This document shows positions 32,896 through 51,455 of a DNA stretch of 64,000 nucleotides, in pieces. A program made the translations under genes and the position numbers. Under the pieces are notes generated by a model that had not been told where the DNA came from, searched no databases, and saw only the letters and a program-made list of their open reading frames with translations. The stretch is from IMG/VR virus record IMGVR_UViG_3300037882_001770, positions 248,001 to 312,000 of that record. The stretch is one strand, 5' to 3'. How positions within the stretch are numbered: position 1 is the stretch's first letter; every line of letters begins with the position of its first letter.

Positions 32896-34521
32896 ATGAC
32901 ACAAGACAATTTAACAGCCAAACAACTTGATTACGCTGTATTCTTGCCGGCCATCAGTGGTTTTTATGCTACCTTTGTAGGCAAACAACGTGATCCTGTA
33001 AACGGCCCATACGTGGATCCGGCTCGCTTACCAGCCGGCATTCCAGACATGGAAATGATGAACTGGCTCAATGATCAAAAGGGTATGTTTCCATACAAGT
33101 GGAGTCTGTATTCGGGTGGGCATGCCAACTTAGATCTCAACAAGCAAGACTGGTCCGAGGACATGGTCCGTAACAGAGATCCAAACACCTTGTTGCTAGG
33201 CGATTCGGGTGGATTCCAGATTGCCAAAGGCCTATGGGAAGGCGACTGGAAAGCCAACTCGGGTTGTCCCAAAGCACAGAAGAAGCGTGAAGCTGTGCTC
33301 AAATGGTTAGACAACATCAGCGACTACTGCATGACCTTAGATATACCGACCTGGGTCATTCACGATAAAAAAGCGTCTGCGGCCTGCCAAATTACTAATT
33401 TACAACAGGCAGTAGACGCCACCAAGTACAACAATGAATACTTTATGAAACACCGACGGGGCAAGGCCAATGGCGGTACTAAGATACTAAATGTACTGCA
33501 AGGCGCCGGACACGATGATGCTGATCGTTGGTATGATTTAATGAAAGACTACTGTGATCCTATCAAATATCCCGACACACACTTTGATGGGTGGGCCATG
33601 GGTGGTCAAAACATGTGTGATGTACATCTAGTACTAAAACGTTTGGTAGCGCTGCGTCATGACAATCTGTTACAAGAAGGCATACACGATTGGATGCACT
33701 TCTTGGGCACAAGCAAATTAGAGTGGGCGGTGTTGTTAACTGACATTCAACGTGCCATTCGCAAGTATGTTAATCCAAGTTTCACCATTAGCTTTGACTG
33801 TGCCAGCCCGTTTTTGGCTACAGCCAATGGGCAGGTGTATCATCACATTGACCTTCCACACAACGATAAATGGTGCTACAGGATGAGTCCCATTGCTGAT
33901 GATAAAAAATATAGTACCGACACTCGTCCATACGGCCAGGCAGTTGTAGCAGATGGATTGGTCGATCACTTTGATGAAAGCCCAATCAGTCAACAGTTAC
34001 AAATGAAGGACATTTGTATCTATAAGCCCGGGGTTAGAAAAACTGAGGCCGAACTCAACGGCGAAACATTTGATCCCAACAACATGAGTCACTTTCATAT
34101 TGCACCGGACTTGAACAAGATTGGCAAGAATGGTAAAACAAGTTGGGACAGTTTCAGTTATGCCCTACTTATGGGTCATAATGTTTGGACACATATCGAG
34201 GCTGTGCAACGTGCCAATCGTGCGTATGATTCGGGTACATGGCCAGCTATGATGTGGAATCAAAACGGCGATCATGCCCGATTCAAGGATATTGTGGATG
34301 CCATATTTGCCACACCCGATCGGGCAGAGGCCGAAGCCATAATCGAACACTATGACCGTTATTGGATGGACATTGTGGGCACACGTGGATTCAAAGGCAA
34401 GAAAGCCAAAAATGCCCGTGCTCAATTCAATGTGTTGTTTGAAGTAGAAGAAACCAACGATGGTGTTGACGGAGACGAAATCGAGTTTGATGAATCTAAA
34501 TTGGAGAATTTAAGTGTATGA
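32896..34521 (+). CDS. dpdA: TGT-fold guanine transglycosylase (DpdA-like)
   Basis: DSGGFQ, TLDIP, NVLQG, WAMGG, HFLG, FDCASP, HN motifs; que-pathway context. Confidence 0.8.
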   Translation: MTQDNLTAKQLDYAVFLPAISGFYATFVGKQRDPVNGPYVDPARLPAGIPDMEMMNWLNDQKGMFPYKWSLYSGGHANLDLNKQDWSEDMVRNRDPNTLLLGDSGGFQIAKGLWEGDWKANSGCPKAQKKREAVLKWLDNISDYCMTLDIPTWVIHDKKASAACQITNLQQAVDATKYNNEYFMKHRRGKANGGTKILNVLQGAGHDDADRWYDLMKDYCDPIKYPDTHFDGWAMGGQNMCDVHLVLKRLVALRHDNLLQEGIHDWMHFLGTSKLEWAVLLTDIQRAIRKYVNPSFTISFDCASPFLATANGQVYHHIDLPHNDKWCYRMSPIADDKKYSTDTRPYGQAVVADGLVDHFDESPISQQLQMKDICIYKPGVRKTEAELNGETFDPNNMSHFHIAPDLNKIGKNGKTSWDSFSYALLMGHNVWTHIEAVQRANRAYDSGTWPAMMWNQNGDHARFKDIVDAIFATPDRAEAEAIIEHYDRYWMDIVGTRGFKGKKAKNARAQFNVLFEVEETNDGVDGDEIEFDESKLENLSV

Positions 34522-34876
34522 TCTAATTTTTATCATGTTAGGTCTGTTGTTTATCAAGCACTGGTATGTTGATTTTGTTAATCAAAGCCAAGAGGAAATC
34601 AATAGCAAGAGCAAGTATGGTAGTCTTGATGGCATATCACACAGTGCCAAACACGGACTAGGAACCATATTTGTATTCTTGTTAGTAGGATTAGATCCTG
34701 CCTTGTCGGTGGCACTCGGTACTATCGATATGATTGTTCATTACCATATTGACTGGATAAAAATGAAATTTGGCACCAATGACATCACTACTAAAGAATT
34801 TTGGAGTCAATTGGGATTCGATCAACTTGTACACGCATTTACTTACATTGGACTGGTTTGGATATTATATGTTTGA
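34514..34876 (+). CDS. DUF3307-like membrane protein
   Basis: KHWYVDFVNQ...HSAKH...HYHIDW...DQLVH pattern. Confidence 0.7.
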   Translation: MYDLIFIMLGLLFIKHWYVDFVNQSQEEINSKSKYGSLDGISHSAKHGLGTIFVFLLVGLDPALSVALGTIDMIVHYHIDWIKMKFGTNDITTKEFWSQLGFDQLVHAFTYIGLVWILYV

Positions 34877-35053: not shown

Positions 35054-35593
35054 ATGGACCGAATTGGACATGAGGAAGTAAATTTCTTTGTAGGAACTGA
35101 AGTAGAGCACACTCCGGCATTTGAACAACTCACACTGTTTGTGGTAGGACTGCAATCTATGACGGATGTCAATCGTCAACTAGAGAATTTAACTTCTTAC
35201 GCTGATCAGAGTCGCAATATCACTCATGTGTATTTTGGTGCCAATCAAAGTTTTCCTAATCCAGCATTTGACGATGCCGCAACATGGAATGCTTGGGAAG
35301 CCATGATTAACAATGTGTTGGCTCAGGGATTCTTTGCCACACTAGATTTAGATGTTACAGCAGTAGAAGGATTACTCGAAAGCAGTTTGGTCGAGCAAAT
35401 GAAATTTATACCAATGATTAGTGTTAAATTACCTTATATCAAACAACTAGGATACAATGCTACTCTTAAAATTGACGACAAAGATTTTAACGCAACAAAC
35501 CCAGGGGTCTGGTGCCACTCGTTACACGACTTACAAAAGCGTGAGGTGTTTACTGACTGGTCTAAATACACAAAGGACGAAGTTATCAAATGA
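35054..35593 (+). CDS. Hypothetical protein in the deazaguanine cluster
   Basis: 179 aa ORF with GTEVEH, HVYFGAN, WCH. Confidence 0.7.
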   Translation: MDRIGHEEVNFFVGTEVEHTPAFEQLTLFVVGLQSMTDVNRQLENLTSYADQSRNITHVYFGANQSFPNPAFDDAATWNAWEAMINNVLAQGFFATLDLDVTAVEGLLESSLVEQMKFIPMISVKLPYIKQLGYNATLKIDDKDFNATNPGVWCHSLHDLQKREVFTDWSKYTKDEVIK

Positions 35594-35916
35594 AAAATTG
35601 GCTAAGACAACGATTAATTAACATATTAGTTGATACTGATGATGGCGTTAAACAACCAAGACCTAGCAGAATCAGTCGTGGAAATATTAGTGTTACATTA
35701 GATGACGGATTGTGTGATGATAGCCCTAGCGGCATTGATCTTCCGGACCCTATTACCTTTAAAGTGCAAGCAGTATCAGGTGGAACAGTAGTTGAATCTC
35801 GTTGGTATGACTATAAGAAAGATGAGCATCGTGTCAAACTGCACATTATCACCCAGGATGAAAACTTATCTGAATCTATTGGCAAAATTGTAACCATGGA
35901 ACTACTACAAAAATGA
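35590..35916 (+). CDS. Hypothetical protein
   Basis: 108 aa ORF, ATGA overlaps. Confidence 0.6.
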   Translation: MKNWLRQRLINILVDTDDGVKQPRPSRISRGNISVTLDDGLCDDSPSGIDLPDPITFKVQAVSGGTVVESRWYDYKKDEHRVKLHIITQDENLSESIGKIVTMELLQK

Positions 35917-36377
35917 TACAACAAGAACGCGAACAAATTGAACGAATTAAATCAAAGGCAGAACGTAAAATCTGGGTTACATTCCGTCGAGAAGGAATCC
36001 ACTGTTATCCAGCAGCAGCCACTGATCCGCAATTAAATACCAACGATGAATACAATGTTGCGTTTCTCGCTAGCCCTCATCGTCATATGTTTCACTTCCG
36101 GGTGTGGATCGATGTCTTCCACAATGACCGAGATATCGAATTCATCCAGTTCAAACGCTGGCTCGAAAATCTTTACAGTGGAACCGGTCCCTATAATGAA
36201 GGTCGAGTTTTAGAATTGAACCATAAATCTTGTGAGATGATCGCAGATGACCTATATATACAGATAGCAGGTCGATATCCAGACCGTGCTGTGTGGATTG
36301 AAGTAGCCGAAGATGGTGAGAACGGTTGCCTCATTAAGTATGAACTTACTCACCCTAACCTCAGTATTAAAATTTAA
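35913..36377 (+). CDS. QueD-like T-fold protein, DpdL-type (putative CDG decarboxylase)
   Basis: LASPHRHMF (LxxxHRHxF in place of QueD CxxxHGH), SCEMIA, EVAEDGENG. Confidence 0.65.
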   Translation: MIQQEREQIERIKSKAERKIWVTFRREGIHCYPAAATDPQLNTNDEYNVAFLASPHRHMFHFRVWIDVFHNDRDIEFIQFKRWLENLYSGTGPYNEGRVLELNHKSCEMIADDLYIQIAGRYPDRAVWIEVAEDGENGCLIKYELTHPNLSIKI

Positions 36378-36388
36378 AAGGAAACATC

Positions 36389-36619
36389 ATGGGCAAGCCT
36401 GTACATCGCCTTAATCCCCGAGCAGTTGCTATTATGGACGATTTGGATAGCTTTTTAGCATTCTGTGTCGACTATGGCTACAGATATAACGAAAGTGATC
36501 TGTACAACTTTAAGAGCTATGCTTGGCAACAATACAACAAATTTAATCAAGGTAAAAATGCCAAGAACATGTGGGATGAAGATACTCGCAGATTCTCAGG
36601 ATATCGTCGCCATGCGTAA
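36389..36619 (+). CDS. Hypothetical protein
   Basis: 76 aa ORF with AGGA RBS. Confidence 0.6.
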   Translation: MGKPVHRLNPRAVAIMDDLDSFLAFCVDYGYRYNESDLYNFKSYAWQQYNKFNQGKNAKNMWDEDTRRFSGYRRHA

Positions 36620-37814
36620 ACTATTCTACATGGGCTTAGAGTCGTACGAGGCTCGGTATACACTACAACTGACTGAATGGAATCGCCGTGTGTTTGAACG
36701 GCGCGGCCTGGATGTGGTTTATGTTCCTGGCACTACTATCGATGACTCCCAAGCTATCTGCGTGGGTCAAGTGCTGGATGCACATGGTCGCAGTTACTTT
36801 GGCATGAGTCAGATGATGAACCTGGTTCAACTAATGCGAAATGGAGAAGTCACTAGTGAAGATGTTATCTACTTTGAAGACATGTTTCAACCCGGTATCG
36901 AGAGCTTGCCTTATATTATGGATCAAGTGCCTGTTACTCACCGTCCTCGTGTTTATGTACGTTGCCTTGCTCAGGCCATTGATCCAGATGACTTTGTTCA
37001 TGTATGGGGTATGGCTAAATGGATGGACCTGTACGAAAAAATGGTTAACGAATTTGTCACAGGTGTATTAGCAACTAATGAAGAGATGGTGGCTCACATG
37101 CGTATTGCAGGGTGGACTGCTCCTATCTACAATATTTCAGGATTGGCGTTTGGCAAAGCAGAAGTTCTAGAGCGTATAGGTGGCTCGCAAAATATCAAAC
37201 CCTTTGCAGAACGTAAACGTCGTGTCGGTTTTGCGGCACGTTGGGATCAAGAGAAGCAACCGGGTTTCTTCATGGACTTGATTGACATGTACGGTGAGTT
37301 AACTACGGAGCCGTGCGAGTTTGCTATATTCCAAGGCGGACCATTACGCAGTAACAATCCTGAATATGTAGAACGTGCCCGACGCATGGAGCGTGAAGGT
37401 AAACTTAAAATTTACGATAACTTAACTAAGAACGAATACTATGCTCTTGTCAACGACACTCGCGTATTGTTTAATTGTGCTTTACAGGACTGGGTGTCAA
37501 ACACAGTCTCAGAAGCAGATACACTTGGAGCAAATGTTTTATATCCTGCTTATCGTAGCTTCCCTGAAACTTTTGCAGATGACCCAAACCGGCTTTATGT
37601 TCCTTGGTCAATAGATGATGCCTATCACAAAATGCAAAACTTGTTACGTGAACCACATCATAACATGGGCTTGATCAGTGATTGGACTGATGGAACTGTT
37701 GATCGCATTGTAGACATTTTAGAAGGCAAGGGCGAGCAATGGAATCGTGCAGGCAATCGCTATCGAGATCATGTAAGCCAGGCCAAATACCATGTAAGGA
37801 AGATCGAATCATGA
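36612..37814 (+). CDS. GT-B glycosyltransferase
   Basis: Start MRKLFYMGLE; GFAARWDQEKQPG, LFNCALQDWVSNTVSEA, LYPAYRSFPE (GT4-like donor-binding region). Confidence 0.7.
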   Translation: MRKLFYMGLESYEARYTLQLTEWNRRVFERRGLDVVYVPGTTIDDSQAICVGQVLDAHGRSYFGMSQMMNLVQLMRNGEVTSEDVIYFEDMFQPGIESLPYIMDQVPVTHRPRVYVRCLAQAIDPDDFVHVWGMAKWMDLYEKMVNEFVTGVLATNEEMVAHMRIAGWTAPIYNISGLAFGKAEVLERIGGSQNIKPFAERKRRVGFAARWDQEKQPGFFMDLIDMYGELTTEPCEFAIFQGGPLRSNNPEYVERARRMEREGKLKIYDNLTKNEYYALVNDTRVLFNCALQDWVSNTVSEADTLGANVLYPAYRSFPETFADDPNRLYVPWSIDDAYHKMQNLLREPHHNMGLISDWTDGTVDRIVDILEGKGEQWNRAGNRYRDHVSQAKYHVRKIES

Positions 37815-38761
37815 AAGTTGTAGTTACTGGTGCGGCCGGGTACATTGGCGGAGAAACACTAATCAAGTTAGTCGATGCCGGACATGATGTACTGGCTATA
37901 GATCGTGTGATGCCACCAGGTAGTTTAATTTCGGTTCCTTGCCAATGGCACACTGGTGATTTTGCCAGTGAACTAGGAATAGACGCTATCAAGTTGTTTT
38001 GCCCTGATGCTATTATTCATTGTGCCGGTACTAGTTTGGTCGGACCAAGCCTAGAGCATCCAGAAGAATACTACAATAATAACTTTATTAAAACTAAAAT
38101 TCTATTAGACTATTTGGTCAAGAATCATGACAAACAAGTTAGATTTATTTTTAGTTCAAGTGCCGCAACCTACGGTAATCCCATCATGACTCCGGTTCAA
38201 GAAATTGATCCAACTGAGCCAATTAGTCCATACGGCCAAAGTAAGTTAATGATTGACTGGATGTTACAAAGTTATCAGCAAGCCTACGGATTAGACTTTG
38301 TGTCATTTCGTTACTTTAATGCTTGCGGTGCTGATAGTCAAGCCCGACACGGTCAGCCACCAGGAGCTACTCATATCATTGCTCGTGTGTTAGAATCAGT
38401 TAAAAATAACACTGACTTTACTTTGTATGGCACCGATTATCCCACTGATGATGGTACTTGTATTCGCGACTATATCCACGTGGAAGATCTAGCAGAAGCA
38501 CACATTATTGCTATAGACCAAACCATCCCCAGCGGTGTTTATAATCTCGGTACTAATGCCGGTAACAGTAATCTTGCAGTTGTACAATTAGCTTCGCAGA
38601 TAGTCAGCCGAGATATTCCGGTACTACACGGACCTCAACGAAAAGGTGATCCTGCTATCCTTACTGCTGATGCTAGCAAGTTTATGAGCGTGAGCTCTTG
38701 GGCTCCAAGATTTACGTTACATGATATTATTACCCACGCATGGGCCTGGTATAATAAATGA
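37811..38761 (+). CDS. galE: UDP-glucose 4-epimerase
   Basis: TGAAGYIG, FSSSAATYG, YGQSK, FRYFNACGA, DGTCIRDYIHV. Confidence 0.9.
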   Translation: MKVVVTGAAGYIGGETLIKLVDAGHDVLAIDRVMPPGSLISVPCQWHTGDFASELGIDAIKLFCPDAIIHCAGTSLVGPSLEHPEEYYNNNFIKTKILLDYLVKNHDKQVRFIFSSSAATYGNPIMTPVQEIDPTEPISPYGQSKLMIDWMLQSYQQAYGLDFVSFRYFNACGADSQARHGQPPGATHIIARVLESVKNNTDFTLYGTDYPTDDGTCIRDYIHVEDLAEAHIIAIDQTIPSGVYNLGTNAGNSNLAVVQLASQIVSRDIPVLHGPQRKGDPAILTADASKFMSVSSWAPRFTLHDIITHAWAWYNK

Positions 38762-39348
38762 GTTTCCAAGCATTATTTGATTTTGAATCTGCGCTAGCTG
38801 AATATACCGGCGCACCTTACGTAGTACTAACTGACGGTTGTACTCATGCTCTAGAACTTTGTTTTCGTTACGACAAAATCAAAGAAACTGCATTTACACC
38901 ATATACCTACTTGAGTGTCCCTATGCTTATGCATCACTTGGGGATCAAGTATGAATATCATAACCAAGAGCATAGACAAAAGTGGACAGGTGAATACAAG
39001 TTCGAATGTACACGTATCTGGGACTCGGCTCGTAGACTAGAACGCAACATGTACCACCCAGGACAAATGCAGTGCCTGAGTTTTGGATGGACCAAACCTC
39101 TACAACTGGGCAAGGTAGGCGCCATCCTTCTTGACGACGCAGAAGCACATCGCGTCATGAGTCGGCAACGGTCAGATGGTAGAGATCTACATGTGCCATG
39201 GGAAACCGAAACCGAATTGATCTTGGGTTATCACTATTGCCCCACTTTGGAACTATGCGTAAAGGGATTAGAATTATTACCCGTTATAGAACCCCGGTCA
39301 CAACCTGGCATTTATCCAGACTGTAGAAATATTTTGTTTACTACTTGA
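38758..39348 (+). CDS. Short DegT/DnrJ-like PLP aminotransferase
   Basis: GCTHALEL, WDSAR, SFGWTKPL (PLP lysine), GAIL; only 196 aa. Confidence 0.7.
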   Translation: MSFQALFDFESALAEYTGAPYVVLTDGCTHALELCFRYDKIKETAFTPYTYLSVPMLMHHLGIKYEYHNQEHRQKWTGEYKFECTRIWDSARRLERNMYHPGQMQCLSFGWTKPLQLGKVGAILLDDAEAHRVMSRQRSDGRDLHVPWETETELILGYHYCPTLELCVKGLELLPVIEPRSQPGIYPDCRNILFTT

Positions 39349-39425: not shown

Positions 39426-40256
39426 ATGCCTAAATATGTTTCACCTGAAGAACAAAAGATAGAAGATTTAAAATCACGAAAATATGCAGACGAAGCGCCG
39501 TATCATCCTGGCTACGAAGATGCGGCCTTGGGACCAATCGCATTCGACGAAGACAAAGACTACAAGGAAGCTAATCTAGCCGATGCCATTAGATTTAACA
39601 TGCGGCGCGATAAGAAACGTTTTTGGGCCGGTGATAACATTAGTGATTATCTGCACGAAGGCGATAAAGAACGCCTTATCAATGAAGCTACGGTGGCTTT
39701 TGAAAAAGTGTTAGATACCTTGTTGATTGATCGTGAAACAGACCCTAACAGCCGAGGCACAGCACGTAGACTGGCCAAGATGTATTTTAACGAAATTATG
39801 GAGGGTAGATATGCGCCAGCCCCAGATGCAACAGCTTTTCCGAATGATTCAGAAGACCGCTATGAAGGTATGTTGGTTGTTCGTAGTGAGTTACGAAGTA
39901 TATGCAGTCATCACCATCAGCCTGTCAGTGGTGTTGCTTATATTGGCATCATCGCCGCCAACAAACTTATCGGTCTTTCTAAGTATACTCGGATCGCTCA
40001 GTGGTGCGCTCGCCGTGGTACTCTACAAGAAGAATTATGTAACGACATTGCAAGAGAAATAATGCGAGCCACAGACTCAGAAAACGTGGGTGTGTATGTA
40101 CAGGCCACGCATGGGTGTTGTGAAAATCGTGGTATTATGGCACATTCCAGTCTAACACAGACTACCGTGCTTCGAGGTTCGTTCCAAACAGATCCCGGCA
40201 CTAAAAAAGAGTTCATGGACAATATCAAACTACAACAGGACTTTGCGCCAAGATGA
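39426..40256 (+). CDS. folE: GTP cyclohydrolase I
   Basis: SICSHHHQP, GLSKYTR, QEEL, HGCCENRG. Confidence 0.95.
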   Translation: MPKYVSPEEQKIEDLKSRKYADEAPYHPGYEDAALGPIAFDEDKDYKEANLADAIRFNMRRDKKRFWAGDNISDYLHEGDKERLINEATVAFEKVLDTLLIDRETDPNSRGTARRLAKMYFNEIMEGRYAPAPDATAFPNDSEDRYEGMLVVRSELRSICSHHHQPVSGVAYIGIIAANKLIGLSKYTRIAQWCARRGTLQEELCNDIAREIMRATDSENVGVYVQATHGCCENRGIMAHSSLTQTTVLRGSFQTDPGTKKEFMDNIKLQQDFAPR

Positions 40257-40907: not shown

Positions 40908-43418
40908 ATGAAGCGGAAATTGCTTTATACACTAATGTTCGGCTCAGTTATTGTGCTCACTGCCTGTGGGGGTGGAGGAGGGGGTGGAAGAGAGAGTGGA
41001 GGAGGAGGTGCTCCTGGTTCTCCACCGATCTATAATACTCCTAATCCATATCTCAGAGCCGAAGTCCCGTATTCTACCCCAGTGTTACAAGCAGTAGTAG
41101 ATCCATTGGTCAACGTGGCAGGTAATGGCTATAAATGGGCAGTAGCCGACACATTCTCGGCAGACATTGTCGGCACCGGTGGTCAAGATTTAATTGTTGC
41201 TGGTCGTATGACCCAACCGACTCCTATCGCAGAATGGGGCGACAATCGCATCAGCATGCTGAGCTGGCAAAACAATCAGCTGGTAGATAAAACAACGCAA
41301 TGGTTTCCAAATGATACCAATATTATATTAGGTACTGAGCCTAGTGTTAAATTTGCTGACTTTTTTAAAACAGGTCGCAATGACATGTTTGTATCAACCG
41401 GTACTGATATGCAACACTACGGTCCAACATATTTTTATCGCAATACCGGCACACAGTTCGAACGTCAACTATTAACCACAGCAAATATTTGGTCGCATGA
41501 TTCTGCAATCGGCGACCTTGACGGGGACGGGTACAAAGATATTGCTATTATTGACTACGGCACTAATACTACACTGGCCTTTAACAACCGAGTAAATGGA
41601 TTTAATGTATATACTCAAGCTCAAAACATAGTTAACGGTTACACCAACGTAGCCATCCATACCGGCAGTAGTATTGCTATTGGTAATTTTTTAGGCAACA
41701 GCCAAGGACAACTGATAGTAACTGATACTCCCGGTGCCAACAACAGTAGTCCTACAAAAATGTATTCTTGGGCGATCAATGCTCAAAATCAACTTAACTT
41801 TACAGAATTATCTACACTACCAACTCCTAGATTTGAACTGCCTAAATGGGCCGGGTATGGGTTTGCACCCGGAAGCCATAACGTTAGAGCAGTAACGTAC
41901 GATTTCAATGATGACGCCAAGCCCGATGTATTGATTTTCAGTCGACCTGGGCTTGGTACTGTAGATAACAAATGGAGCGAAATACAGTTCTTAAAAAATA
42001 GCGGAACTGGTGCATTTACTGATGTAACCGATGATACTCTAGTAGGTTATAATCATAGAACCTACACTACATATAATCCTAAATTTCTTGACTTAAACGG
42101 TGACGGGCGCGAAGACATCTTAGTATCCGGTGCAGATTTTACAGGGACTAACAATAGCACACAATTTTTATTAAAAAGTTCAGACGGCAAGTATGTGGCA
42201 GCATATCAAAACATTCTAACTGACTTTGCGACTCAGGCCAATTCAGTGCAAGGTGCCGACAACATGGGCAATACTGTAAATGTACTCAAAGCGCCCAATG
42301 GCAAACTATTTTTAGTTTCGGCAGTTAGTTTTATGAACAACGGCGATCGCCAACTTGCGGTGTACATGAGCGAACTTGGTAGTCAAAGTACTACAACTGC
42401 TCAAACAGCAATTAACTTAATTTTACAAAAATGGCCGTACATGACTGTGCCGGAGGCCAACGAAGTGTTGGCGCGAACTAGTGCTACATATTTTGGCGGA
42501 CGTGTAATTGATATAGATACTATGATGAATCCTGTTGGGTCATTAAGTATTCCTAACGCTAGAGGTTTGGCACCGATCAACGGATTTATTGCAGGAGTTA
42601 ATTTAGATTCTGGACAAGCGGTTGTACTTGATGAGCTTAAACGATCATACAGTATGAATATTCAGCCCATGAACATCATGCGTTTAAATGCGTTTCAAAT
42701 GAATATGGGACATAACGATCAACATAATCTTACTAGTCATGCTGAGTATCTGGTAAACGGACCTGTAATGACTTATGGTAACATTAGAGTCGGTAGCGAA
42801 AATCGAAACAACTTCACACACGGCGGTGCAAGCGACGGTCCAATGCTGGTTAATCAACAACTTACAAATTACACTCTTGGCCTTCCAAACATCTGGAGCA
42901 AAGGTAATTTTTCAGTTGGTACACAATATACTGTTCTTAATCAAAATCCGTGGCTTGCAATAGGCGGTGCTTGGGGCCAAATTACCAATTCAAACGTGCT
43001 TGATAATGTAGTAACCTATCGTAATAAAGGATTTAGTACGCAGGCTAGTTTGATGCACGTGACCACAAATATCACTCCCGGACTAGTAACCAATGTGAGC
43101 AACATGACTGGGGGATGGGCCGAAACCGGATATAGATATACTGACTGGAAAGGGCTTGGCGACATTGGCGTATATGCTGGTGTCAAACCGGTTGTGTTTT
43201 CGGGCAATGTTACAGCAAGAATTCCAACCAGTATTGACAACGCAGGCAACATAGTGTACACTAATAAAAACATGGCCATACAAAATCAAACCACTACATA
43301 TATCCGTGCTATGTACAGCAACATGCTAGACAAAAATACACAGTATCGAGTTAGTGGCATGGTGTTGTCAAGTGGTCAATATCGACTCATGTATGAACTT
43401 AGATGGTGGTTAGACTAA
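40908..43418 (+). CDS. Lipoprotein with FG-GAP/VCBS repeats and a beta-rich C-terminal domain
   Basis: Lipobox VLTAC plus poly-Gly; GDLDGDGYKD, DFNDDAKPD, DLNGDGRED repeats; aromatic C-terminus YELRWWLD. Confidence 0.75.
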   Translation: MKRKLLYTLMFGSVIVLTACGGGGGGGRESGGGGAPGSPPIYNTPNPYLRAEVPYSTPVLQAVVDPLVNVAGNGYKWAVADTFSADIVGTGGQDLIVAGRMTQPTPIAEWGDNRISMLSWQNNQLVDKTTQWFPNDTNIILGTEPSVKFADFFKTGRNDMFVSTGTDMQHYGPTYFYRNTGTQFERQLLTTANIWSHDSAIGDLDGDGYKDIAIIDYGTNTTLAFNNRVNGFNVYTQAQNIVNGYTNVAIHTGSSIAIGNFLGNSQGQLIVTDTPGANNSSPTKMYSWAINAQNQLNFTELSTLPTPRFELPKWAGYGFAPGSHNVRAVTYDFNDDAKPDVLIFSRPGLGTVDNKWSEIQFLKNSGTGAFTDVTDDTLVGYNHRTYTTYNPKFLDLNGDGREDILVSGADFTGTNNSTQFLLKSSDGKYVAAYQNILTDFATQANSVQGADNMGNTVNVLKAPNGKLFLVSAVSFMNNGDRQLAVYMSELGSQSTTTAQTAINLILQKWPYMTVPEANEVLARTSATYFGGRVIDIDTMMNPVGSLSIPNARGLAPINGFIAGVNLDSGQAVVLDELKRSYSMNIQPMNIMRLNAFQMNMGHNDQHNLTSHAEYLVNGPVMTYGNIRVGSENRNNFTHGGASDGPMLVNQQLTNYTLGLPNIWSKGNFSVGTQYTVLNQNPWLAIGGAWGQITNSNVLDNVVTYRNKGFSTQASLMHVTTNITPGLVTNVSNMTGGWAETGYRYTDWKGLGDIGVYAGVKPVVFSGNVTARIPTSIDNAGNIVYTNKNMAIQNQTTTYIRAMYSNMLDKNTQYRVSGMVLSSGQYRLMYELRWWLD

Positions 43419-43789
43419 TGGACTTAGAAGAAGCTCAACGATACGGAATAGCACCTTGGGACAACATACTCAAAGAAGACTTTCACGTGGTAGTGTATCT
43501 AGATCGATATCCTTGTACTGAAGGACATAGACTATATGTTCCTAGATACGACTCGGATATGTTGATGAATCAGTGCCTCACTGACGCTCTAAGAGATGGC
43601 CAGGCTATGGTTGCCGCAGGTGAGTGTGACGGATTCAACATTGGTATGAATTGGGGTACAGCCGCGGGGCAAACTGTGATGTGGCCACACATTCATCTTA
43701 TACCAAGAAGAAATGGTGATGTTGAAGATCCAGTGGGCGGAGTTAGAAATACCATACCCGGTAAAGGTAATTATAAAAAATGGAAGTAG
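43418..43789 (+). CDS. HIT-family nucleotide hydrolase
   Basis: GFNIGMN...AGQTVMWPHIHLIPR. Confidence 0.9.
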   Translation: MDLEEAQRYGIAPWDNILKEDFHVVVYLDRYPCTEGHRLYVPRYDSDMLMNQCLTDALRDGQAMVAAGECDGFNIGMNWGTAAGQTVMWPHIHLIPRRNGDVEDPVGGVRNTIPGKGNYKKWK

Positions 43790-44061: not shown

Positions 44062-44586
44062 ATGGCAAAATATCTTTCAACAAAAACTTATGGTAACGAT
44101 CGCGGCTTGTCCTGCTGTTTCAGACAATGGCGCAGTACACACAGCCATTGCAGTTTGCTACATGGTTACTCAATTGGTATTAAACTGATCTTTGAAAGTG
44201 AAACTCTAGATGATCGTAACTGGGTCATGGACTTTGGCGGACTCAAAGCGTTCAAAGAATGGGCTGATTGGCAATTTGATCATACCATGTGTGTGGGGTC
44301 TGATGATCCCCATTTAGAAAAATTCAAAGCCCTAGCCGCACTAGGCAAACAGGCCGAAGGCGGCATAGTAGATCTGCGTATTGTAGAAGCGGTGGGCTGT
44401 GAAAAATTTGCAGAACTTGCTTATCGCACAATGCAACAAATATTAGCGGCATATCAAGAAGGTAGCAAGTGGCATCATCCTGACGGACGTGTATTTGAAG
44501 CACGTTACCCAGTTGAGATCGGTGTTAGACTGCGCTCAGCAGAAGTATTCGAACATGCCGGTAATAGTGCTATCTATGAAGGCTAA
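44062..44586 (+). CDS. queD: 6-carboxytetrahydropterin synthase
   Basis: HCSLLHGY, WVMDFGGLK, FDH, GCEKFAE. Confidence 0.9.
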   Translation: MAKYLSTKTYGNDRGLSCCFRQWRSTHSHCSLLHGYSIGIKLIFESETLDDRNWVMDFGGLKAFKEWADWQFDHTMCVGSDDPHLEKFKALAALGKQAEGGIVDLRIVEAVGCEKFAELAYRTMQQILAAYQEGSKWHHPDGRVFEARYPVEIGVRLRSAEVFEHAGNSAIYEG

Positions 44587-44615: not shown

Positions 44616-45509
44616 ATGACAAGACCGTTTAAAATTGCAGTATTGTTACCCACTCGTGGAAGGACTGATGCCTTGGCTCGTAGTATCATTAGCCTGTTTA
44701 ATCGAGCTGTGGACAAAAGCAGCATTCAGTTGATGATGATTTTTGATCACGACGACGATATAGGGTATGGATACTTTGAAAGAAAAATTCGGCCTTGGCT
44801 GGACGATCACGAAATCGACTATACTGCACTCGGAGTCGACAGCATGGGGTATGAGGGTCTTAATCGTTATTACAACACTATGGCAGAATCATGTGATGCT
44901 GATTGGTTTTTTATCTGGAACGATGATGCTATCATGGAAACTACTGGCTGGGATCAAATAATTACCAAAAACACAGGCGAATTTAAGCTGTTGGCTGTAC
45001 GCACACACAACGATCATCCTTACAGTATTTTTCCTATTATTCCTCGTGAGTGGTACGATCTATTTGGCTTGTTGAGCCGTCATCAGATGATCGACGCAGA
45101 GTTTAGTCAGCTTGCATACATGCTCAATATATTTGAACGAGTAGATATTTTTGTTACCCACGACCGTGCAGACCTCACCGGCAACAATGCCGACGAAACT
45201 GACAAAAAACGTGTGAGATTCGAGGGCAATCCAGAAAATCCGCATGACTTTCATCACACTCTCTACTCTAAGCAACGTCTTGTTGACGCAGAAACCATAG
45301 CACAATATATGAAGTCAATTGGCATGGACGTAGAATTTTGGACCAATGTCAAGGCTGGCAAACAGTATCCATGGGAACAACTGATCAAAAATGACACTAA
45401 CAAACAGATGAGACAATTTGGCGTAACAGTAGATCCTGTCACAAACAAAGTGGTTGCTATCAAACCAGACGATCATGCAAACATAGTAAGGCAACAAAAT
45501 GAATCTTGA
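44616..45509 (+). CDS. GT-A glycosyltransferase (GT2-like)
   Basis: LLPTRGR, FDHDD, FFIWNDD. Confidence 0.8.
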   Translation: MTRPFKIAVLLPTRGRTDALARSIISLFNRAVDKSSIQLMMIFDHDDDIGYGYFERKIRPWLDDHEIDYTALGVDSMGYEGLNRYYNTMAESCDADWFFIWNDDAIMETTGWDQIITKNTGEFKLLAVRTHNDHPYSIFPIIPREWYDLFGLLSRHQMIDAEFSQLAYMLNIFERVDIFVTHDRADLTGNNADETDKKRVRFEGNPENPHDFHHTLYSKQRLVDAETIAQYMKSIGMDVEFWTNVKAGKQYPWEQLIKNDTNKQMRQFGVTVDPVTNKVVAIKPDDHANIVRQQNES

Positions 45510-46734
45510 TATCATTACCAGTAAAAAAATTGATCAGTGCTTGATTACCAGTTTGCCAGTTACTAAAGTTTTAGATTTTGGTCAGCATTCTTATGCTGAT
45601 ACTTTTATTAGCCAAGATCAATATCATCTCAGCGAGCCAGTGTTTCCTTTACAGGTCATGCTGTGTCCAGATTCAGGCATGATACAGTTAGGATATGTCA
45701 GCAACGCCGAAGCAAGATATAATTTATACAGCTACAGTTACACTTCCAGTAATAGCAAAACTGCAAGAGATCATTGGGATCGTTATGCCGCCACTATTAA
45801 AAATACCTACGGGGTCAACGGACTAGTTGTTGAGATTGGCAGCAATGACGGATATCTAATTGGACAGTTTAATGGCGAAGCTACCACAGCACTTGGAGTT
45901 GACAGTAGCAAAGAAATGTGTCGTCTTGCCAAGAACAAAGGAGTCGAAACAGTACACGGATTATTTGATTTCGGTACTGCCCAGTCTCTAAAAAACACAC
46001 ATGGCACAGCAAAAATTATTATGGCCAATAATGTGTTTAATCATGCCAACGACCCGCTGGCATTTGCCAAAGCAGTTGGCGAATTGTTAGACCCAGAGTC
46101 AGGTGTATTTGTATTCGAAGTGCCATACTGGCTCAGTATGGTCCAAAGTGGCCGCTTTACAGATATGGTCTATCACGAACATCCTAGCTATTTTACAGTA
46201 AAGAGTCTTTGGAATTTGCTTAAAATTGCAGGGCTAGAAATTACAGATTATCAAATAGTAGACTACCATGGCGGAAGTCTGAGAGTACATGCTCGTTGTG
46301 ATACTGGTGCAGACATGCCAGACTTGATTACCCATGCAATACTTCAAGAACACGTAGCTGGAATATTCCTGCCAGAGTTTTATCAAAATCTTCAAAGAAA
46401 ATTTGAATTGCAACGAGCTGAATGGTTGTATAATTTTAATCAGATTTACATGACCGATCCCGATGCTGTGTTTATTGGCATTGGTGCAGCCGCAAAAGCA
46501 AACACCTGGCTAACCTGGCACGGCCTCAATGCTACCCACTTGCATTGTATTACCGACGCTAGCGAATACAAGCAAGGCAAATACACCCCGCTGAGTAGAA
46601 TTCCTATTTTAGGCGACAACGAGTTTGCCAATCATCCGGCTCCGTATGCGTTGATTTTAAGTTGGAATATTAGCGAAGGCCTCAAGAAATCCATACTAAA
46701 TATCAACCCCAACACAAGGTTTATTTCACAATGA
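45499..46734 (+). CDS. NDP-sugar C-methyltransferase-like protein
   Basis: VEIGSNDG, ANNVFNH, YHEHPSYF, HGGSLR, GAAAKANT, LILSWN. Confidence 0.85.
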   Translation: MNLDIITSKKIDQCLITSLPVTKVLDFGQHSYADTFISQDQYHLSEPVFPLQVMLCPDSGMIQLGYVSNAEARYNLYSYSYTSSNSKTARDHWDRYAATIKNTYGVNGLVVEIGSNDGYLIGQFNGEATTALGVDSSKEMCRLAKNKGVETVHGLFDFGTAQSLKNTHGTAKIIMANNVFNHANDPLAFAKAVGELLDPESGVFVFEVPYWLSMVQSGRFTDMVYHEHPSYFTVKSLWNLLKIAGLEITDYQIVDYHGGSLRVHARCDTGADMPDLITHAILQEHVAGIFLPEFYQNLQRKFELQRAEWLYNFNQIYMTDPDAVFIGIGAAAKANTWLTWHGLNATHLHCITDASEYKQGKYTPLSRIPILGDNEFANHPAPYALILSWNISEGLKKSILNINPNTRFISQ

Positions 46735-47138
46735 AACACTACAATATTCACAGCAACCAAGAGCCTGGTCTAGGTGTACATCAAGACGATCGCGGTACCA
46801 TTGCAGATATTTTTTATAAATTAAATGTAAATCACGGTTGTTTAATCAGCAATGCTCCCGGAGCAGTGCGTGGCAATCATTATCACAAATTAACAACACA
46901 GTACACCTTTATTGTAGCCGGCAGTTTGGAATACTATAGCAAATCTGTCGACAGTGACAAGCCAGCTCAAGTGCTATCAGCAAAGGGCGGGGATTTTATT
47001 ATTAGCGAACCAAACGAGATCCATGCACTCCGCGCTGGCGCACAAGGGTGTGTGTTTATAGCATTTGCTGAAGGCCCTCGTGGTGGTGAAGACTACGAAA
47101 ATGACACATTTCGAGTAGACTCAATTATTCCACAATGA
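46731..47138 (+). CDS. Cupin (sugar epimerase/isomerase-like)
   Basis: DDRG, RGNHYH, PNEIH. Confidence 0.8.
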   Translation: MKHYNIHSNQEPGLGVHQDDRGTIADIFYKLNVNHGCLISNAPGAVRGNHYHKLTTQYTFIVAGSLEYYSKSVDSDKPAQVLSAKGGDFIISEPNEIHALRAGAQGCVFIAFAEGPRGGEDYENDTFRVDSIIPQ

Positions 47139-49427: not shown

Positions 49428-49961
49428 ATGAAAAAAATATATTATACCTGGCAAGATGTTGAGAAACAAACCCAAGAAATTCTACGCCAACTTCAGCGCG
49501 ATGCATGGATGCCCGACTATGTAGTAGGACTCACTCGTGGTGGACTAGTACCAGCTAATTTGATTAGTCAATACCTCGAGGTTCCAATGGAAACACTTAA
49601 GGTTAGTTTGCGTGATGATAACTCGCAACCAGAAAGTAATTTATGGATGGCCGAAGATGCTTACGGGTATACCATCCATGATCCTATGTGTAACGGTGAT
49701 GGCCGTAAGAATATTCTTATTGTAGACGATATCAATGATTCGGGTGCTACACTTAACTGGATCAAACAAGACTGGATGAGCAGTTGCATGCCAGTTGACA
49801 GCCGTTGGGATCATGTATGGAGCAATAATGTTCGTGTAGCTGTGCTAGTGGATAACGAAGCAAGCACCAGTGAATTAAATGTTAGTTATTCAGCTGTCGA
49901 CCTAAATAAGGCTGAAGAAGATTCGTGGATTGTTTTTCCTTGGGAAGATTGGTGGAAATAA
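49428..49961 (+). CDS. Type I phosphoribosyltransferase (Gpt-like)
   Basis: VGLTRGGL, ILIVDDINDSGATL, WIVFPWE. Confidence 0.9.
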   Translation: MKKIYYTWQDVEKQTQEILRQLQRDAWMPDYVVGLTRGGLVPANLISQYLEVPMETLKVSLRDDNSQPESNLWMAEDAYGYTIHDPMCNGDGRKNILIVDDINDSGATLNWIKQDWMSSCMPVDSRWDHVWSNNVRVAVLVDNEASTSELNVSYSAVDLNKAEEDSWIVFPWEDWWK

Positions 49962-50597: not shown

Positions 50598-51455
50598 ATG
50601 AAAATTAAAGTCAGCGAAATATTTTACAGTCTACAAGGCGAAGGTCGTTTTGTAGGAGTGCCCAGCGTATTCTTACGCACTTATGGTTGTAACTTTACCT
50701 GTTCAGGGTTTGGTTGCAAACCAGGAGAAAAGAGTGCAGGTGCAGACGAAGTTGCTAAAACAGTAGAGCTGTACAAAACATTTAACGACTTGCCTTTGGT
50801 AGAAACAGGGTGTGACAGCTATGCATCATGGCATCCTGCCTACAAGCACCTAAGTCCTACACAGACCACAGAAGAATTGGTAGAACGCATGCTGGCCCTA
50901 ACCCCTAACAATGCATGGCAACAAAACAACGGCAATGACGTACACTTGGTCATCACCGGCGGCGAACCCTTGTTAGGGTGGCAACGTGCTTACAAAGAGT
51001 TGTTAGAGCATCCACGCATGGCAGACTTAAAAAACATCACGTTTGAAACCAACGGAACTCAGGAACTACATGAAGATTTTAAATTGTACTTGGATTACTG
51101 GGCCTGCGACGGTGGAAGAGAAGTTACGTTCAGTGTAAGTGCCAAGCTGAGTGCCAGTGGCGAGAAGTGGGAGGAAGCTATTCGTCCAGAAATTGTCAAC
51201 AGTTATGAAGCTTACGGACATACATATCTTAAGTTTGTAGTAGAAACCGATGATCATATTCGTGATGCTATTCGTGCCACTGATGAATTTCGTGCCGGTG
51301 GATTTCAAGGAGTAATTTACTTGATGCCGCAGGGCGGCGTGGTCGAACCATACGATCGGAACAAGTTGCGCATTGCCAATATCTGCTGTGAACAAGGGTG
51401 GAACTACAGCCCTAGATTACACGTGGATCTCTGGGGCAACGGCTGGGGAAAGTAA
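50598..51455 (+). CDS. queE: 7-carboxy-7-deazaguanine synthase (radical SAM)
   Basis: EIFYSLQGEG, FLRTYGCNFTC...GCDS, ITGGEP, FETNG, PRLH. Confidence 0.93.
   Translation: MKIKVSEIFYSLQGEGRFVGVPSVFLRTYGCNFTCSGFGCKPGEKSAGADEVAKTVELYKTFNDLPLVETGCDSYASWHPAYKHLSPTQTTEELVERMLALTPNNAWQQNNGNDVHLVITGGEPLLGWQRAYKELLEHPRMADLKNITFETNGTQELHEDFKLYLDYWACDGGREVTFSVSAKLSASGEKWEEAIRPEIVNSYEAYGHTYLKFVVETDDHIRDAIRATDEFRAGGFQGVIYLMPQGGVVEPYDRNKLRIANICCEQGWNYSPRLHVDLWGNGWGK

What the first reader, a model, noticed from the sequence alone, without database searches (positions are those of the whole stretch)
35913..39348. GT-B glycosyltransferase, GalE and aminotransferase wedged between DpdL-like and folE genes: possible glycosylated deazaguanine
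The DpdL-like gene, a short ORF, the GT-B enzyme, galE and a DegT-like aminotransferase are separated by no more than ~11 nt or overlap, and folE follows. T-even phages use GT-B enzymes to glucosylate hmC in DNA (established), but no hydroxymethylase gene appears in this window. Inference: the sugar or amino-sugar acceptor could be a 7-substituted deazaguanine such as the CDG carboxylate, which would be a purine hypermodification I know of no characterised example of.
Basis: inference. Interest (0 to 1): 0.75.

Follow-up and report, generated by a model that had tools for sequence, protein, structure and literature searches.

The report
Glycosyltransferase built into deazaguanine DNA-modification cluster
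A jumbo phage carries a sugar-transferring enzyme that, across very different phages, always sits inside the gene set that swaps guanine in DNA for 7-deazaguanine, which suggests (but does not prove) a sugar-decorated deazaguanine, a DNA base modification not yet described.

Summary
On the + strand lie DpdL (35913-36377), a 76-aa ORF, a 400-aa protein, GalE, a 196-aa DegT-like protein and FolE, with an 11-nt gap, 8/4/4-nt overlaps and a 77-nt gap before folE.

The 400-aa protein has no direct Pfam, PHROG or NCBIfam hit. Its AlphaFold model (pLDDT 95.7) is a GT-B fold of the GT4 type, and the donor-binding motifs R-x4-K and D-x7-E are conserved.

The main result is comparative. In 91 of 94 IMG/VR loci with enough flank (GT identity 30-90%), DpdL lies within 3 kb of this GT, beside FolE, QueD and QueE. 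The same holds in cultured phages ACP17, PA5oct, BUDD/X1, BCSR5, Phosso and BUCT-ZZ01. QueC is absent from this genome.

DpdL phages without the GT exist, including phiST, whose DNA carries plain 7-deazaguanine. So the GT is an add-on to the DpdL system. GalE joins only in the jumbo-phage clade, and the half-size DegT only in the closest relatives.

Best reading: a UDP-hexose is transferred to a deazaguanine-derived acceptor, as free base or in DNA. The acceptor atom, the sugar and the presence of sugar in virion DNA are all inferred. PA5oct has a modified G of unknown chemistry and is the obvious test case.

The parts
32896..34521 (+). DpdA-type DNA guanine transglycosylase (541 aa), same subfamily as PA5oct gp EST35_0316
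   Evidence: It carries the TGT-like motifs DSGGFQ (residue 103) and FDCASP (residue 300). BLASTP against the ACP17 protein upstream of its GT gives 4e-6. A profile of this family hits the PA5oct 544-aa ORF at 7e-150. There is no Pfam or PDB sequence hit, so the identity rests on motifs and context.
35054..35593 (+). g35054 family (179 aa), conserved unknown partner of DpdL
   Evidence: It is present in 71 of 80 close loci. It is homologous to the 'c9' ORF next to the GT in distant phages (hhalign 96.4%, E 1e-9). It is fused to DpdL in L098 and L112 and present in ACP17. The AF2 model has pLDDT 93 but no clear structural match.
35913..36377 (+). DpdL (QueD-like T-fold; proposed CDG decarboxylase)
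   Evidence: It has the LASPHRHMF motif, matching LxxxHRHxF (PMC10516641). It matches phrog_17812. tblastn finds the DpdL of ACP17, phiST, PA5oct and others.
36389..36619 (+). 76-aa basic ORF, conserved between DpdL and GT within the jumbo-phage clade
   Evidence: It is found in 79 of 80 close loci at 68% mean identity. It is absent from distant lineages. It has no family hit. pI is 9.1.
36612..37814 (+). GT-B / GT4-like glycosyltransferase (400 aa), the core of the finding
   Evidence: - AF2 model: pLDDT 95.7, pTM 0.93.
- Foldseek finds BshA, MshA, glycogen synthase, SenB and PimA at E 1e-12 to 1e-9.
- 84 of 112 family members hit PF00534.
- R210-x4-K215 and D293-x7-E301 align with the GRLxxxK and EX7E motifs of PglH and GlgM.
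37811..38761 (+). UDP-glucose 4-epimerase GalE (316 aa)
   Evidence: TIGR01179 scores 293 bits, above the cut-off. Pfam Epimerase gives 3.6e-51. The GAAGYIG and YGQSK motifs are present. It is linked to the GT only where GT identity is 60% or more.
38758..39348 (+). Half-size DegT/DnrJ/EryC1-like PLP-fold protein (196 aa)
   Evidence: Pfam PF01041 gives 2.5e-9. The SFGxxK lysine aligns with the PseC Schiff-base lysine. The D of IWDSAR and the K are at least 95% conserved in 92 ORFs of 192-203 aa. The Atlas shows a viral family matching the large domain of full-length DegT at TM 0.87.
39426..40256 (+). GTP cyclohydrolase I FolE
   Evidence: Pfam PF01227 gives 1e-38. phrog_2197 also matches.
44062..44586 (+). 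QueD (PTPS family, catalytic Cys retained)
   Evidence: Pfam PF01242 gives 1.6e-12, above the cut-off. The sequence shows CSLLHGY.
49428..49961 (+). Xanthine/guanine phosphoribosyltransferase-like protein travelling with the cluster
   Evidence: Pfam PF00156 gives 3.5e-17. NCBIfam XPRT gives 9e-14. It recurs in related loci and in BUCT-ZZ01.
50598..51455 (+). QueE (7-carboxy-7-deazaguanine synthase), divergent
   Evidence: NCBIfam QueE models score 3e-12 to 3e-10 on the N-terminus, below their cut-offs. Radical_SAM and Fer4_12 hits are weak.

Best explanation
The 400-aa protein is an active GT4-type (GT-B) glycosyltransferase that forms an integral, conserved part of the QueC-less, DpdL-type 7-deazaguanine DNA-modification module.

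Proposed pathway:
1. FolE, QueD and QueE make 7-carboxy-7-deazaguanine (CDG).
2. DpdL, probably working with the g35054-family protein, processes CDG.
3. The GT transfers a hexose from a nucleotide sugar to the deazaguanine-derived acceptor.
4. DpdA places the base in DNA. Glycosylation may happen either before or after this insertion.

The expected result is a sugar-bearing deazaguanine at a subset of G positions, which would protect the phage genome from nucleases.

In this jumbo-phage clade the phage GalE would secure the donor pool (UDP-Gal or UDP-Glc), and the half-size DegT may tailor the sugar further.

Shown: the fold, the motifs, the gene linkage, and the absence of QueC and of thymidylate-synthase-type hydroxymethylases.
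Inferred: the acceptor, the attachment atom, the donor, the order of steps, and the presence of sugar in virion DNA.
For: Fold and motifs:
- The model is a confident GT-B fold with GT4 neighbours.
- 84 of 112 family members match PF00534.
- The R-x4-K and D-x7-E motifs are invariant or nearly so. They align with the diphosphate- and ribose-binding motifs of the solved GT4 enzymes PglH and GlgM.

Linkage:
- DpdL lies within 3 kb of the GT in 91 of 94 loci with at least 3 kb of flank, over GT identities of 30-90%.
- Distant PolA-UDG phages carry the order QueD-QueE-FolE-DpdL-c9-GT.
- Cultured phages show the same linkage:
  - ACP17: FolE-c9-DpdA-GT-DpdL-QueE.
  - PA5oct: DpdA-GT-DpdL with QueE nearby.
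  - BUDD/X1, BCSR5, Phosso and BUCT-ZZ01.

Constraint: the GT is the most conserved protein of the module, at 84% mean identity against 71-72% for DpdA and DpdL.

The GT is an add-on: profile searches of whole genomes find no GT in phiST, RHph_I1_18, Bakedbeans, D479, Ahp1 or MA9V-3. phiST DNA holds plain dDG (PMC10516641).

Genome content: no QueC and no ThyA-type hydroxymethylase.

From the literature:
- PA5oct DNA has a modified G of undetermined chemistry and is sensed by hypermodification-dependent END nucleases (PMC12191111).
- A GT glycosylates a free 7-deazapurine base in huimycin biosynthesis.
- Galactosyl- and mannosyl-queuosine exist in tRNA (PMC12518689).
Against: - There is no chemical evidence for a sugar on any deazaguanine in DNA.
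- If DpdL decarboxylates CDG to 7-deazaguanine, no obvious hydroxyl is left at C7. Attachment would then need N2, O6, an ester formed before decarboxylation, or a C-glycoside.
- The GT is acidic (pI 5.3; family median 5.8). Its nearest solved neighbours act mostly on small molecules. This argues against DNA as the direct acceptor but not against a free base.
- GalE and the DegT-like gene are clade-specific, so they say nothing about the family's ancestral donor.
- Complex prediction for DpdA with the GT gave no answer.
Confidence: 0.5

Rival explanations
1. The GT works in the deazaguanine pathway but the sugar is not in the final DNA. There are two versions. In one, it forms a transient glycosyl intermediate, for example an acyl-glycoside that activates the CDG carboxylate in place of the missing QueC adenylation, or a carrier form of the base. 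In the other, it acts mainly as a non-catalytic partner of DpdA or DpdL.
For: - QueC is absent, so another way of activating the carboxylate would fit.
- The GT is often translationally coupled to the neighbouring candidate transglycosylase or to DpdA.
- DpdL plus DpdA alone were inactive in E. coli.
- The protein is acidic.
Against: - phiST makes dDG without any GT, so the GT is not needed for the basic DpdL chemistry.
- The donor-binding motifs are strictly conserved, which argues against a purely structural role.
- GalE recruitment in one clade suggests that the identity of the sugar matters. That fits a sugar kept in the product better than one that is discarded.
Confidence: 0.2
2. The GT glycosylates something unrelated to deazaguanine, such as another DNA base, a virion protein or a host envelope glycan. 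On this reading it sits in the cluster only because the region is a general replication and modification island.
For: - GT4 enzymes have very broad acceptor ranges.
- The genome carries further sugar-pathway genes at 45499-49406 and a second GT4.
- The record is only about 89% complete, so a pyrimidine hydroxylation route could have been missed.
Against: - Linkage to DpdL persists down to about 30% GT identity, in phages with different polymerases (PolB, PolA-UDG) and different genome sizes. The GT usually abuts DpdL, c9 or DpdA directly.
- The look-alike GT4s that lie outside deazaguanine clusters are partial hits in a BshA-like context, as in PhiXhv-12.
- There is no PF00303 match in the genome.
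Confidence: 0.1
3. The GT makes a pterin glycoside, as cyanobacterial BGluT does, from FolE- and PTPS-type products. This would be an auxiliary metabolic function rather than a DNA modification.
For: - BGluT (5ze7) is among the structural neighbours (rank 35).
- FolE and two PTPS-fold proteins (QueD, DpdL) are adjacent.
- One member occurs in a cyanophage.
Against: - The GT always travels with QueE and a DpdA-type transglycosylase, which commit the pathway to deazaguanine in DNA.
- BGluT is not a closer match than dozens of other GT4 enzymes.
- Most hosts of the cultured members (Pseudomonas, Acidovorax, Xanthomonas) are, from my own knowledge, not known for pterin glycosides.
Confidence: 0.07

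Closest known systems
DpdL-type 7-deazaguanine DNA modification of Cellulophaga phage phiST (FolE-QueD-QueE-DpdL-DpdA3, giving dDG; Cui et al. 2023, PMC10516641)
   Same: It has FolE, QueD, QueE and DpdL with the LxxxHRHxF motif, lacks QueC, and has a DpdA-type transglycosylase. The cluster lies next to the replication genes.
   Different: phiST has no GT and no g35054-family gene near the cluster. Instead it carries a MazG-like pyrophosphatase and a kinase-like ATPase. The window's DpdA is the large PA5oct type, not the roughly 260-aa phiST protein.
Pseudomonas jumbo phage PA5oct and Acidovorax phage ACP17 clusters
   Same: They share the same GT family, the same DpdL, and in PA5oct the same DpdA subfamily (7e-150). 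ACP17 also has the g35054 family. PA5oct has a restriction-resistant modified G (PMC12191111).
   Different: Their GTs are shorter (342-361 aa), with a deletion around profile positions 232-262. Neither has a GalE or DegT-like gene beside the GT. The chemistry of their modification has not been determined.
tRNA queuosine glycosylation (mannosyl- and galactosyl-queuosine). That QTMAN/GTDC1 is a GT4-type enzyme is from my own knowledge (Zhao et al. 2023). The structures of manQ and galQ are in PMC12518689.
   Same: A glycosyltransferase decorates a 7-deazaguanine base that a TGT-family enzyme placed in a nucleic acid. An Atlas feature search lists a bacterial QTMAN cluster among the neighbours (rank 49, score 0.97).
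   Different: There the acceptor is the cyclopentenediol of queuosine in tRNA, which this phage cannot make. The QTMAN_N signature domain PF12038 is not detectable here.
HuiG of huimycin biosynthesis, which glycosylates a free 7-deazapurine base with UDP-GlcNAc (bioRxiv 10.64898/2026.04.15.718813)
   Same: A glycosyltransferase works together with the FolE, QueD and QueE genes and uses a free 7-deazapurine base as acceptor. This shows that base-level glycosylation is chemically feasible. The huimycin family of gene clusters is reported there to encode GT4-type glycosyltransferases (PF13439).
   Different: That is an actinomycete secondary-metabolite pathway with QueC and preQ0 and without DpdA.
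T-even phage DNA glucosyltransferases (T4 AGT and BGT)
   Same: They are GT-B fold enzymes that use UDP-glucose to decorate a modified base in phage DNA as an anti-restriction measure.
   Different: Their acceptor is 5-hydroxymethylcytosine, and no hmC pathway is encoded here. They are not among the 50 best solved-structure matches listed. A cyanophage 'DNA alpha-GT' appears only at rank 42 of the viral library, at a generic GT-B level.

Membership tests
GT-B fold, GT4-type glycosyltransferases (Pfam Glycos_transf_1, PF00534) | Two Rossmann-like domains (GT-B architecture) | tested here: met
   The AF2 model has pLDDT 95.7. Foldseek E values of 1e-12 to 1e-9 and TM of about 0.6-0.67 to BshA, MshA, PimA and glycogen synthase extend over residues 1 to about 380.
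GT-B fold, GT4-type glycosyltransferases (Pfam Glycos_transf_1, PF00534) | Sequence match to the family model above the curated cut-off | tested here: inconclusive
   The window protein itself has no PF00534 hit; its best match is PF13524 at E 0.035. 84 of 112 homologues match PF00534 at E of 1 or less, with a best value of 2e-10. Of the ten members scanned singly, two pass the cut-off: P0172 and P0252.
GT-B fold, GT4-type glycosyltransferases (Pfam Glycos_transf_1, PF00534) | Donor-binding motifs: R/K pair (GRLxxxK) and EX7E | tested here: met
   R210 and K215 are invariant. D293 and E301 are at least 90% conserved. They align with the RLDxxK motif of PglH and with the RxxxxK and EPLGIVNLE motifs of GlgM. 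The first E is replaced by D.
GT-B fold, GT4-type glycosyltransferases (Pfam Glycos_transf_1, PF00534) | Glycosyl transfer from a nucleotide sugar | not testable with these tools
   This needs an enzyme assay.
DpdL-type phage 7-deazaguanine DNA-modification system (Cui et al. 2023) | DpdL with the LxxxHRHxF motif (Cys of QueD replaced by Leu) | tested here: met
   LASPHRHMF is at residue 52. tblastn and profile searches find the DpdL of phiST and ACP17.
DpdL-type phage 7-deazaguanine DNA-modification system (Cui et al. 2023) | FolE, QueD and QueE present, QueC absent | tested here: met
   FolE, QueD and QueE are found. PF06508 has no match in the 317-kb record. QueE scores only weakly.
DpdL-type phage 7-deazaguanine DNA-modification system (Cui et al. 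2023) | DpdA (TGT-family) transglycosylase | tested here: inconclusive
   The DSGGFQ and FDCASP motifs are present. BLASTP gives a weak 4e-6 to the ACP17 neighbour, and the profile gives 7e-150 to the PA5oct ORF. There is no Pfam TGT or PDB sequence match, and no structure was modelled.
DpdL-type phage 7-deazaguanine DNA-modification system (Cui et al. 2023) | 7-deazaguanine derivative present in virion DNA | not testable with these tools
   This needs LC-MS of the DNA. The window comes from an uncultured IMG/VR record.
tRNA-queuosine mannosyltransferase (QTMAN / GTDC1) | N-terminal QTMAN_N domain (PF12038) | tested here: not met
   PF12038 has no match in the genome at E of 10 or less. It is not among the 25 families listed for the 112 members. 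The only support is an Atlas feature lead at rank 49.
T4-type DNA glucosyltransferases (AGT / BGT) | Specific structural or sequence similarity beyond the GT-B fold, and a 5-hmC pathway in the genome | tested here: not met
   They are not among the 50 solved-structure matches listed. There is no PF00303 hydroxymethylase.
DegT/DnrJ/EryC1 sugar aminotransferases (PF01041) | Full two-domain fold-type-I architecture of about 360-390 aa | tested here: not met
   The protein is 196 aa and the family spans 192-203 aa. The Pfam match covers only profile positions 28-86 of 360. Atlas models align with only the large domain of full-length DegT.
DegT/DnrJ/EryC1 sugar aminotransferases (PF01041) | PLP Schiff-base Lys and pyridine-binding Asp | tested here: met
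   The K of SFGxxK aligns with the SFHAIK of PseC. The K and the D of IWDSAR are at least 95% conserved in 78 unique sequences. That this D is the pyridine-binding Asp is inferred from motif likeness.
UDP-glucose 4-epimerase GalE (TIGR01179) | Score above the equivalog cut-off, with the GxxGxxG and YxxxK motifs | tested here: met
   The score is 293.4 bits against a cut-off of 262.3. GAAGYIG and YGQSK are present.

The most novel reading that the evidence does not exclude
Phages with the DpdL + g35054 + GT module carry a glycosylated 7-deazaguanine in their DNA, which would be a sugar-bearing purine analogue. One route is that a hexosyl-deazaguanine base is made first and DpdA then inserts it. 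The boldest version is a decarboxylation-linked C-glycoside at C7. In this jumbo-phage clade, GalE and the mini-DegT would tailor the sugar to galactose or an amino-sugar. This would also explain why DpdL plus DpdA alone could not be reconstituted, and what the unidentified modified G of PA5oct is.
Probability: 0.4. Interest if true: 0.85.

Novelty: new variant of a known kind. Interest (0 to 1): 0.72.

Why it matters
All sugar-decorated DNA bases known so far are pyrimidines (glucosyl-hmC, base J, arabinosyl-hmC, glycosylated 5-hydroxycytosine). The eight known deazaguanine DNA modifications carry only small groups.

A conserved glycosyltransferase inside the deazaguanine module would join these two chemistries. 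The family is very common: more than 8000 clusters at 90% identity in metagenomes, and it occurs in phage-therapy-relevant Pseudomonas jumbo phages of the PA5oct group.

If true, it would:
- give a candidate identity for the undetermined modified G of PA5oct;
- supply the 'other unknown enzymes' missing from the failed DpdL reconstitution;
- matter for restriction, CRISPR and glycosylase-based defences that sense modified G;
- affect sequencing of such DNA.

It is directly testable with cultured phages.

Tried and rejected
- Sequence-library annotation of the GT (Pfam, PHROGs, NCBIfam, PDB phmmer) gave nothing.
- A near-identical phage genome search found none.
- QTMAN membership was rejected.
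- Complex prediction for DpdA with the GT gave no answer, so it counts neither for nor against.
- The g35054 fold search (Foldseek on PDB and AFDB clusters, VIA wide) found no convincing match. The best Z was 6.9 to a STAS domain and 6.1 to the partial barrel of QueE. The Atlas lead to GH18 and TIM barrels was below its reliability marks.
- Identifying the roughly 300-aa ORF next to the GT in distant phages as DpdA3 failed. hhalign to the large DpdA gave 0.4% probability, and there was no hit to phiST ORFs or to Pfam. Only the DSGA and VDSASW motifs point that way.
- Phosso's annotated 'glycosylase' is not a g35054 homologue.
- The ORF upstream of the GT in BUDD is not DpdL. The real DpdL lies downstream of DpdA.
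The converse statistic, the share of all DpdL loci that hold a GT, therefore exists only for cultured phages.
- The GT4 hits in PhiXhv and Ep032 phages were dismissed as a different, BshA-like context.
- The supplementary tables of Cui et al. and the 2024 MMBR review are not held.

Full report
**Setting.** The window is bases 248001-312000 of a single 317,493-bp IMG/VR virus record, about 89% complete. This is a jumbo phage, and its genes lie almost all on the + strand. No near-identical cultured phage exists in the phage collection.

- The ORFs lie at 35913-36377, 36389-36619, 36612-37814, 37811-38761 and 38758-39348, and folE follows at 39426-40256.
- The junctions are an 11-nt gap with an AAGGAAA ribosome-binding site, an 8-nt overlap, two ATGA overlaps, and 77 nt before folE.
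- The first ORF carries the published DpdL signature LxxxHRHxF as LASPHRHMF (motif from PMC10516641).
- GalE passes the NCBIfam GalE equivalog cut-off.
- FolE is a clear match.
- The 'aminotransferase' is only 196 aa and matches just the N-terminal part of the DegT profile.

**The 400-aa protein is a glycosyltransferase.**
- It has no hit in Pfam, PHROGs, NCBIfam or PDB sequences.
- The family is very large: at least 8000 clusters at 90% identity and 769 representatives at 50% identity.
- An AlphaFold model built on 112 homologues is highly confident, with pLDDT 95.7 and pTM 0.93.
- Foldseek places the model among GT-B enzymes of the GT4 type: BshA, MshA, glycogen synthase, SenB, PimA, LmbT and BGluT, at E 1e-12 to 1e-9.
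- 84 of 112 family members touch Pfam Glycos_transf_1, and some pass its cut-off.
- R210 and K215 are invariant, and D293 and E301 are nearly so. A profile search of PDB aligns them with the GRLxxxK and EX7E donor-binding motifs of PglH and GlgM.
- I therefore take it to be a catalytically competent, nucleotide-sugar-dependent transferase.
- There is no specific likeness to T4 AGT or BGT.
- The QTMAN_N signature of the tRNA queuosine mannosyltransferase is absent. An Atlas feature search does list a QTMAN cluster among distant neighbours.

**Gene linkage is the central result.**
- Close relatives. In 80 IMG/VR loci with GT identity of 80-90%, the gene order is kept, although variable genes are inserted between the conserved ones. 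The order is PolB, g30999, g32121, DpdA, g35054, DpdL, the 76-aa ORF, GT, GalE, mini-DegT, FolE, (HIT), QueD, g44616, then PRTase and QueE further on.
- Broader sample. A second scan, seeded with the distant Xanthomonas phage BUDD protein, brought loci down to about 30% GT identity. Counting unique loci with at least 3 kb on both sides, DpdL lies within 3 kb of the GT in 11/12, 3/3, 22/24 and 55/55 loci. These are the identity bins below 40%, 40-60%, 60-75% and 75% or more.
- Most distant lineage. These are smaller phages with a PolA-UDG replication module. Their block is QueD-QueE-FolE-DpdL-c9-GT, followed by a roughly 300-aa ORF.
- The c9 ORF. It is homologous to the window's g35054 (hhalign 96.4%, E 1e-9). 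In two loci it is fused to DpdL, so the two very likely act together.
- Cultured phages with the same GT family:
  - Acidovorax phage ACP17: FolE, g35054-like, DpdA, GT, DpdL, QueE.
  - The Pseudomonas PA5oct group: a 540-aa DpdA, then GT and DpdL, with QueE nearby.
  - Xanthomonas phages BUDD and X1.
  - Burkholderia phage BCSR5.
  - Sinorhizobium phage Phosso.
  - The T4-like cyanophage BUCT-ZZ01.
- The DpdA. The window's 541-aa protein has the TGT-type motifs DSGGFQ and FDCASP. It belongs to the PA5oct subfamily, with a profile E of 7e-150.

**The GT is an add-on, not a universal part.**
- Profile searches of whole genomes find no GT in six DpdL-bearing phages: Cellulophaga phiST, Rhizobium RHph_I1_18, Vibrio Bakedbeans, Vibrio D479, Aeromonas Ahp1 and Chryseobacterium MA9V-3.
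- phiST is the phage in which complete replacement of dG by plain 2'-deoxy-7-deazaguanine was measured.
- So DpdL chemistry does not need the GT, and GT-bearing systems probably go one step further or take another route.
- Two literature points fit this. DpdL plus DpdA of ACP17 gave no dDG in E. coli, and the authors suspected missing enzymes. PA5oct DNA resists several restriction enzymes in a way that points to a modified G in GA or GG contexts. That DNA is sensed by nucleases which recognise hypermodified DNA, but its chemistry is undetermined (PMC12191111).
- I found no paper in the held library describing a glycosylated deazaguanine in DNA.

**The accessory sugar genes.**
- GalE lies within 8 kb of the GT in 0/15 loci below 60% GT identity, 23/24 at 60-75% and 55/55 at 75% or more.
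- The mini-DegT is within 6 kb in only 3/24 loci at 60-75% identity, but in 53/55 at 75% or more.
- They are therefore clade-specific tailoring or supply genes, not part of the ancestral module.
- The mini-DegT is not a broken gene. 92 ORFs of 192-203 aa keep the Schiff-base lysine (SFGxxK, aligned with the PseC lysine) and an aspartate in IWDSAR.
- An Atlas relative of the mini-DegT superposes on the large domain of full-length DegT at TM 0.87. An 866-aa viral fusion of this domain with a methyltransferase and a GT4 also exists.

**Genome content.**
- The genome lacks QueC and any thymidylate-synthase-type hydroxymethylase.
- It holds QueD with its catalytic cysteine, a divergent QueE, an XGPRT-like phosphoribosyltransferase and a HIT protein.

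**Mechanism.**
- Shown: an apparently active GT4-type enzyme, and its tight, deep and repeated linkage to DpdL, g35054, DpdA and the CDG-synthesis genes.
- Inferred: that it glycosylates a deazaguanine-derived acceptor.
- Base or DNA is open. The protein is acidic (pI 5.3) and its structural neighbours are mostly small-molecule enzymes. TGT-family enzymes tolerate bulky 7-substituents; the example of queuine is from my own knowledge. A GT glycosylates a free 7-deazapurine in huimycin biosynthesis. I therefore lean slightly towards glycosylation of the free base before DpdA inserts it.
- The attachment atom is open. Alternatives are N2 or O6 attachment, or a C-glycoside at the electron-rich C7.

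**Rivals.** In order of weight they are: a pathway role in which the sugar is not retained; an unrelated acceptor; and a pterin glycoside.

**Limits.**
- There is no chemistry, and the source is an uncultured phage.
- The DpdA identity rests on motifs and context.
- The complex prediction was uninformative.
- The converse census, how many DpdL loci carry the GT, was possible only for cultured phages.

Noticed in passing
window 35054-35593; L098:9072-9992; L112:4836-5615: The g35054 family is a conserved neighbour of DpdL and the GT across lineages and is fused to DpdL in two loci. Its confident model (pLDDT 93) has no clear match among solved structures. The best results are Z 6.9 to a STAS domain and Z 6.1 to the partial barrel of QueE.
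   Followed up: partly
window 45499-49406 and 52723-53199: This is a block of nucleotide-sugar tailoring genes: a sugar C-methyltransferase, a cupin, a short SDR, a 257-aa UDP-glucose dehydrogenase fragment, an epimerase/dehydratase, and further on a cytidylyltransferase-like gene. It is interleaved with QueD, the PRTase and QueE. Only about 7 of 80 close relatives have it.
   Followed up: partly
genome C1:18288-30316 (outside the window) and elsewhere: The 317-kb record has thirteen radical-SAM-domain ORFs. Six of them, of about 400-480 aa, are clustered on the minus strand.
   Followed up: no
window 49428-49961 and 43403-43789: An XGPRT-like phosphoribosyltransferase and a small HIT protein recur in the deazaguanine cluster of related phages. 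BUCT-ZZ01 also has an XGPRT gene beside QueE. This hints at a nucleotide-level branch of the pathway.
   Followed up: no
window 40908-43418: An 836-aa predicted lipoprotein with FG-GAP repeats sits in the middle of the cluster. It has an LTAC lipobox followed by a glycine run. Only 7 of 80 close relatives have it.
   Followed up: no
window 34514-34876: A DUF3307 membrane protein overlaps the end of dpdA. It is absent from all 80 close relatives and seen only in two more distant loci (L125, L130).
   Followed up: no
L194, L196 (Haliscomenobacter MAG), L195 (Chitinophagales MAG): Close relatives of the GT (76-85% identity) lie on contigs binned into Bacteroidota MAGs. This is a possible host hint, or simply a binning artefact.
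   Followed up: no
L001:6010-7353 (Synechococcus phage BUCT-ZZ01): A second GT-B gene (PF13692, 3e-5) lies in the same deazaguanine cluster, two genes upstream of the family GT. It could add a second sugar.
   Followed up: no
L180:7212-8363 (Vibrio phage Bakedbeans), L190:6392-7273 (Chryseobacterium phage MA9V-3): In these GT-less phages DpdL is the C-terminal domain of a longer protein (383 and 293 aa). The N-terminal part is unidentified.
   Followed up: no
genome C1:228990-229328 (outside the window): A second, canonical GT4 glycosyltransferase (PF00534, 6e-21) lies about 19 kb upstream of the window.
   Followed up: no
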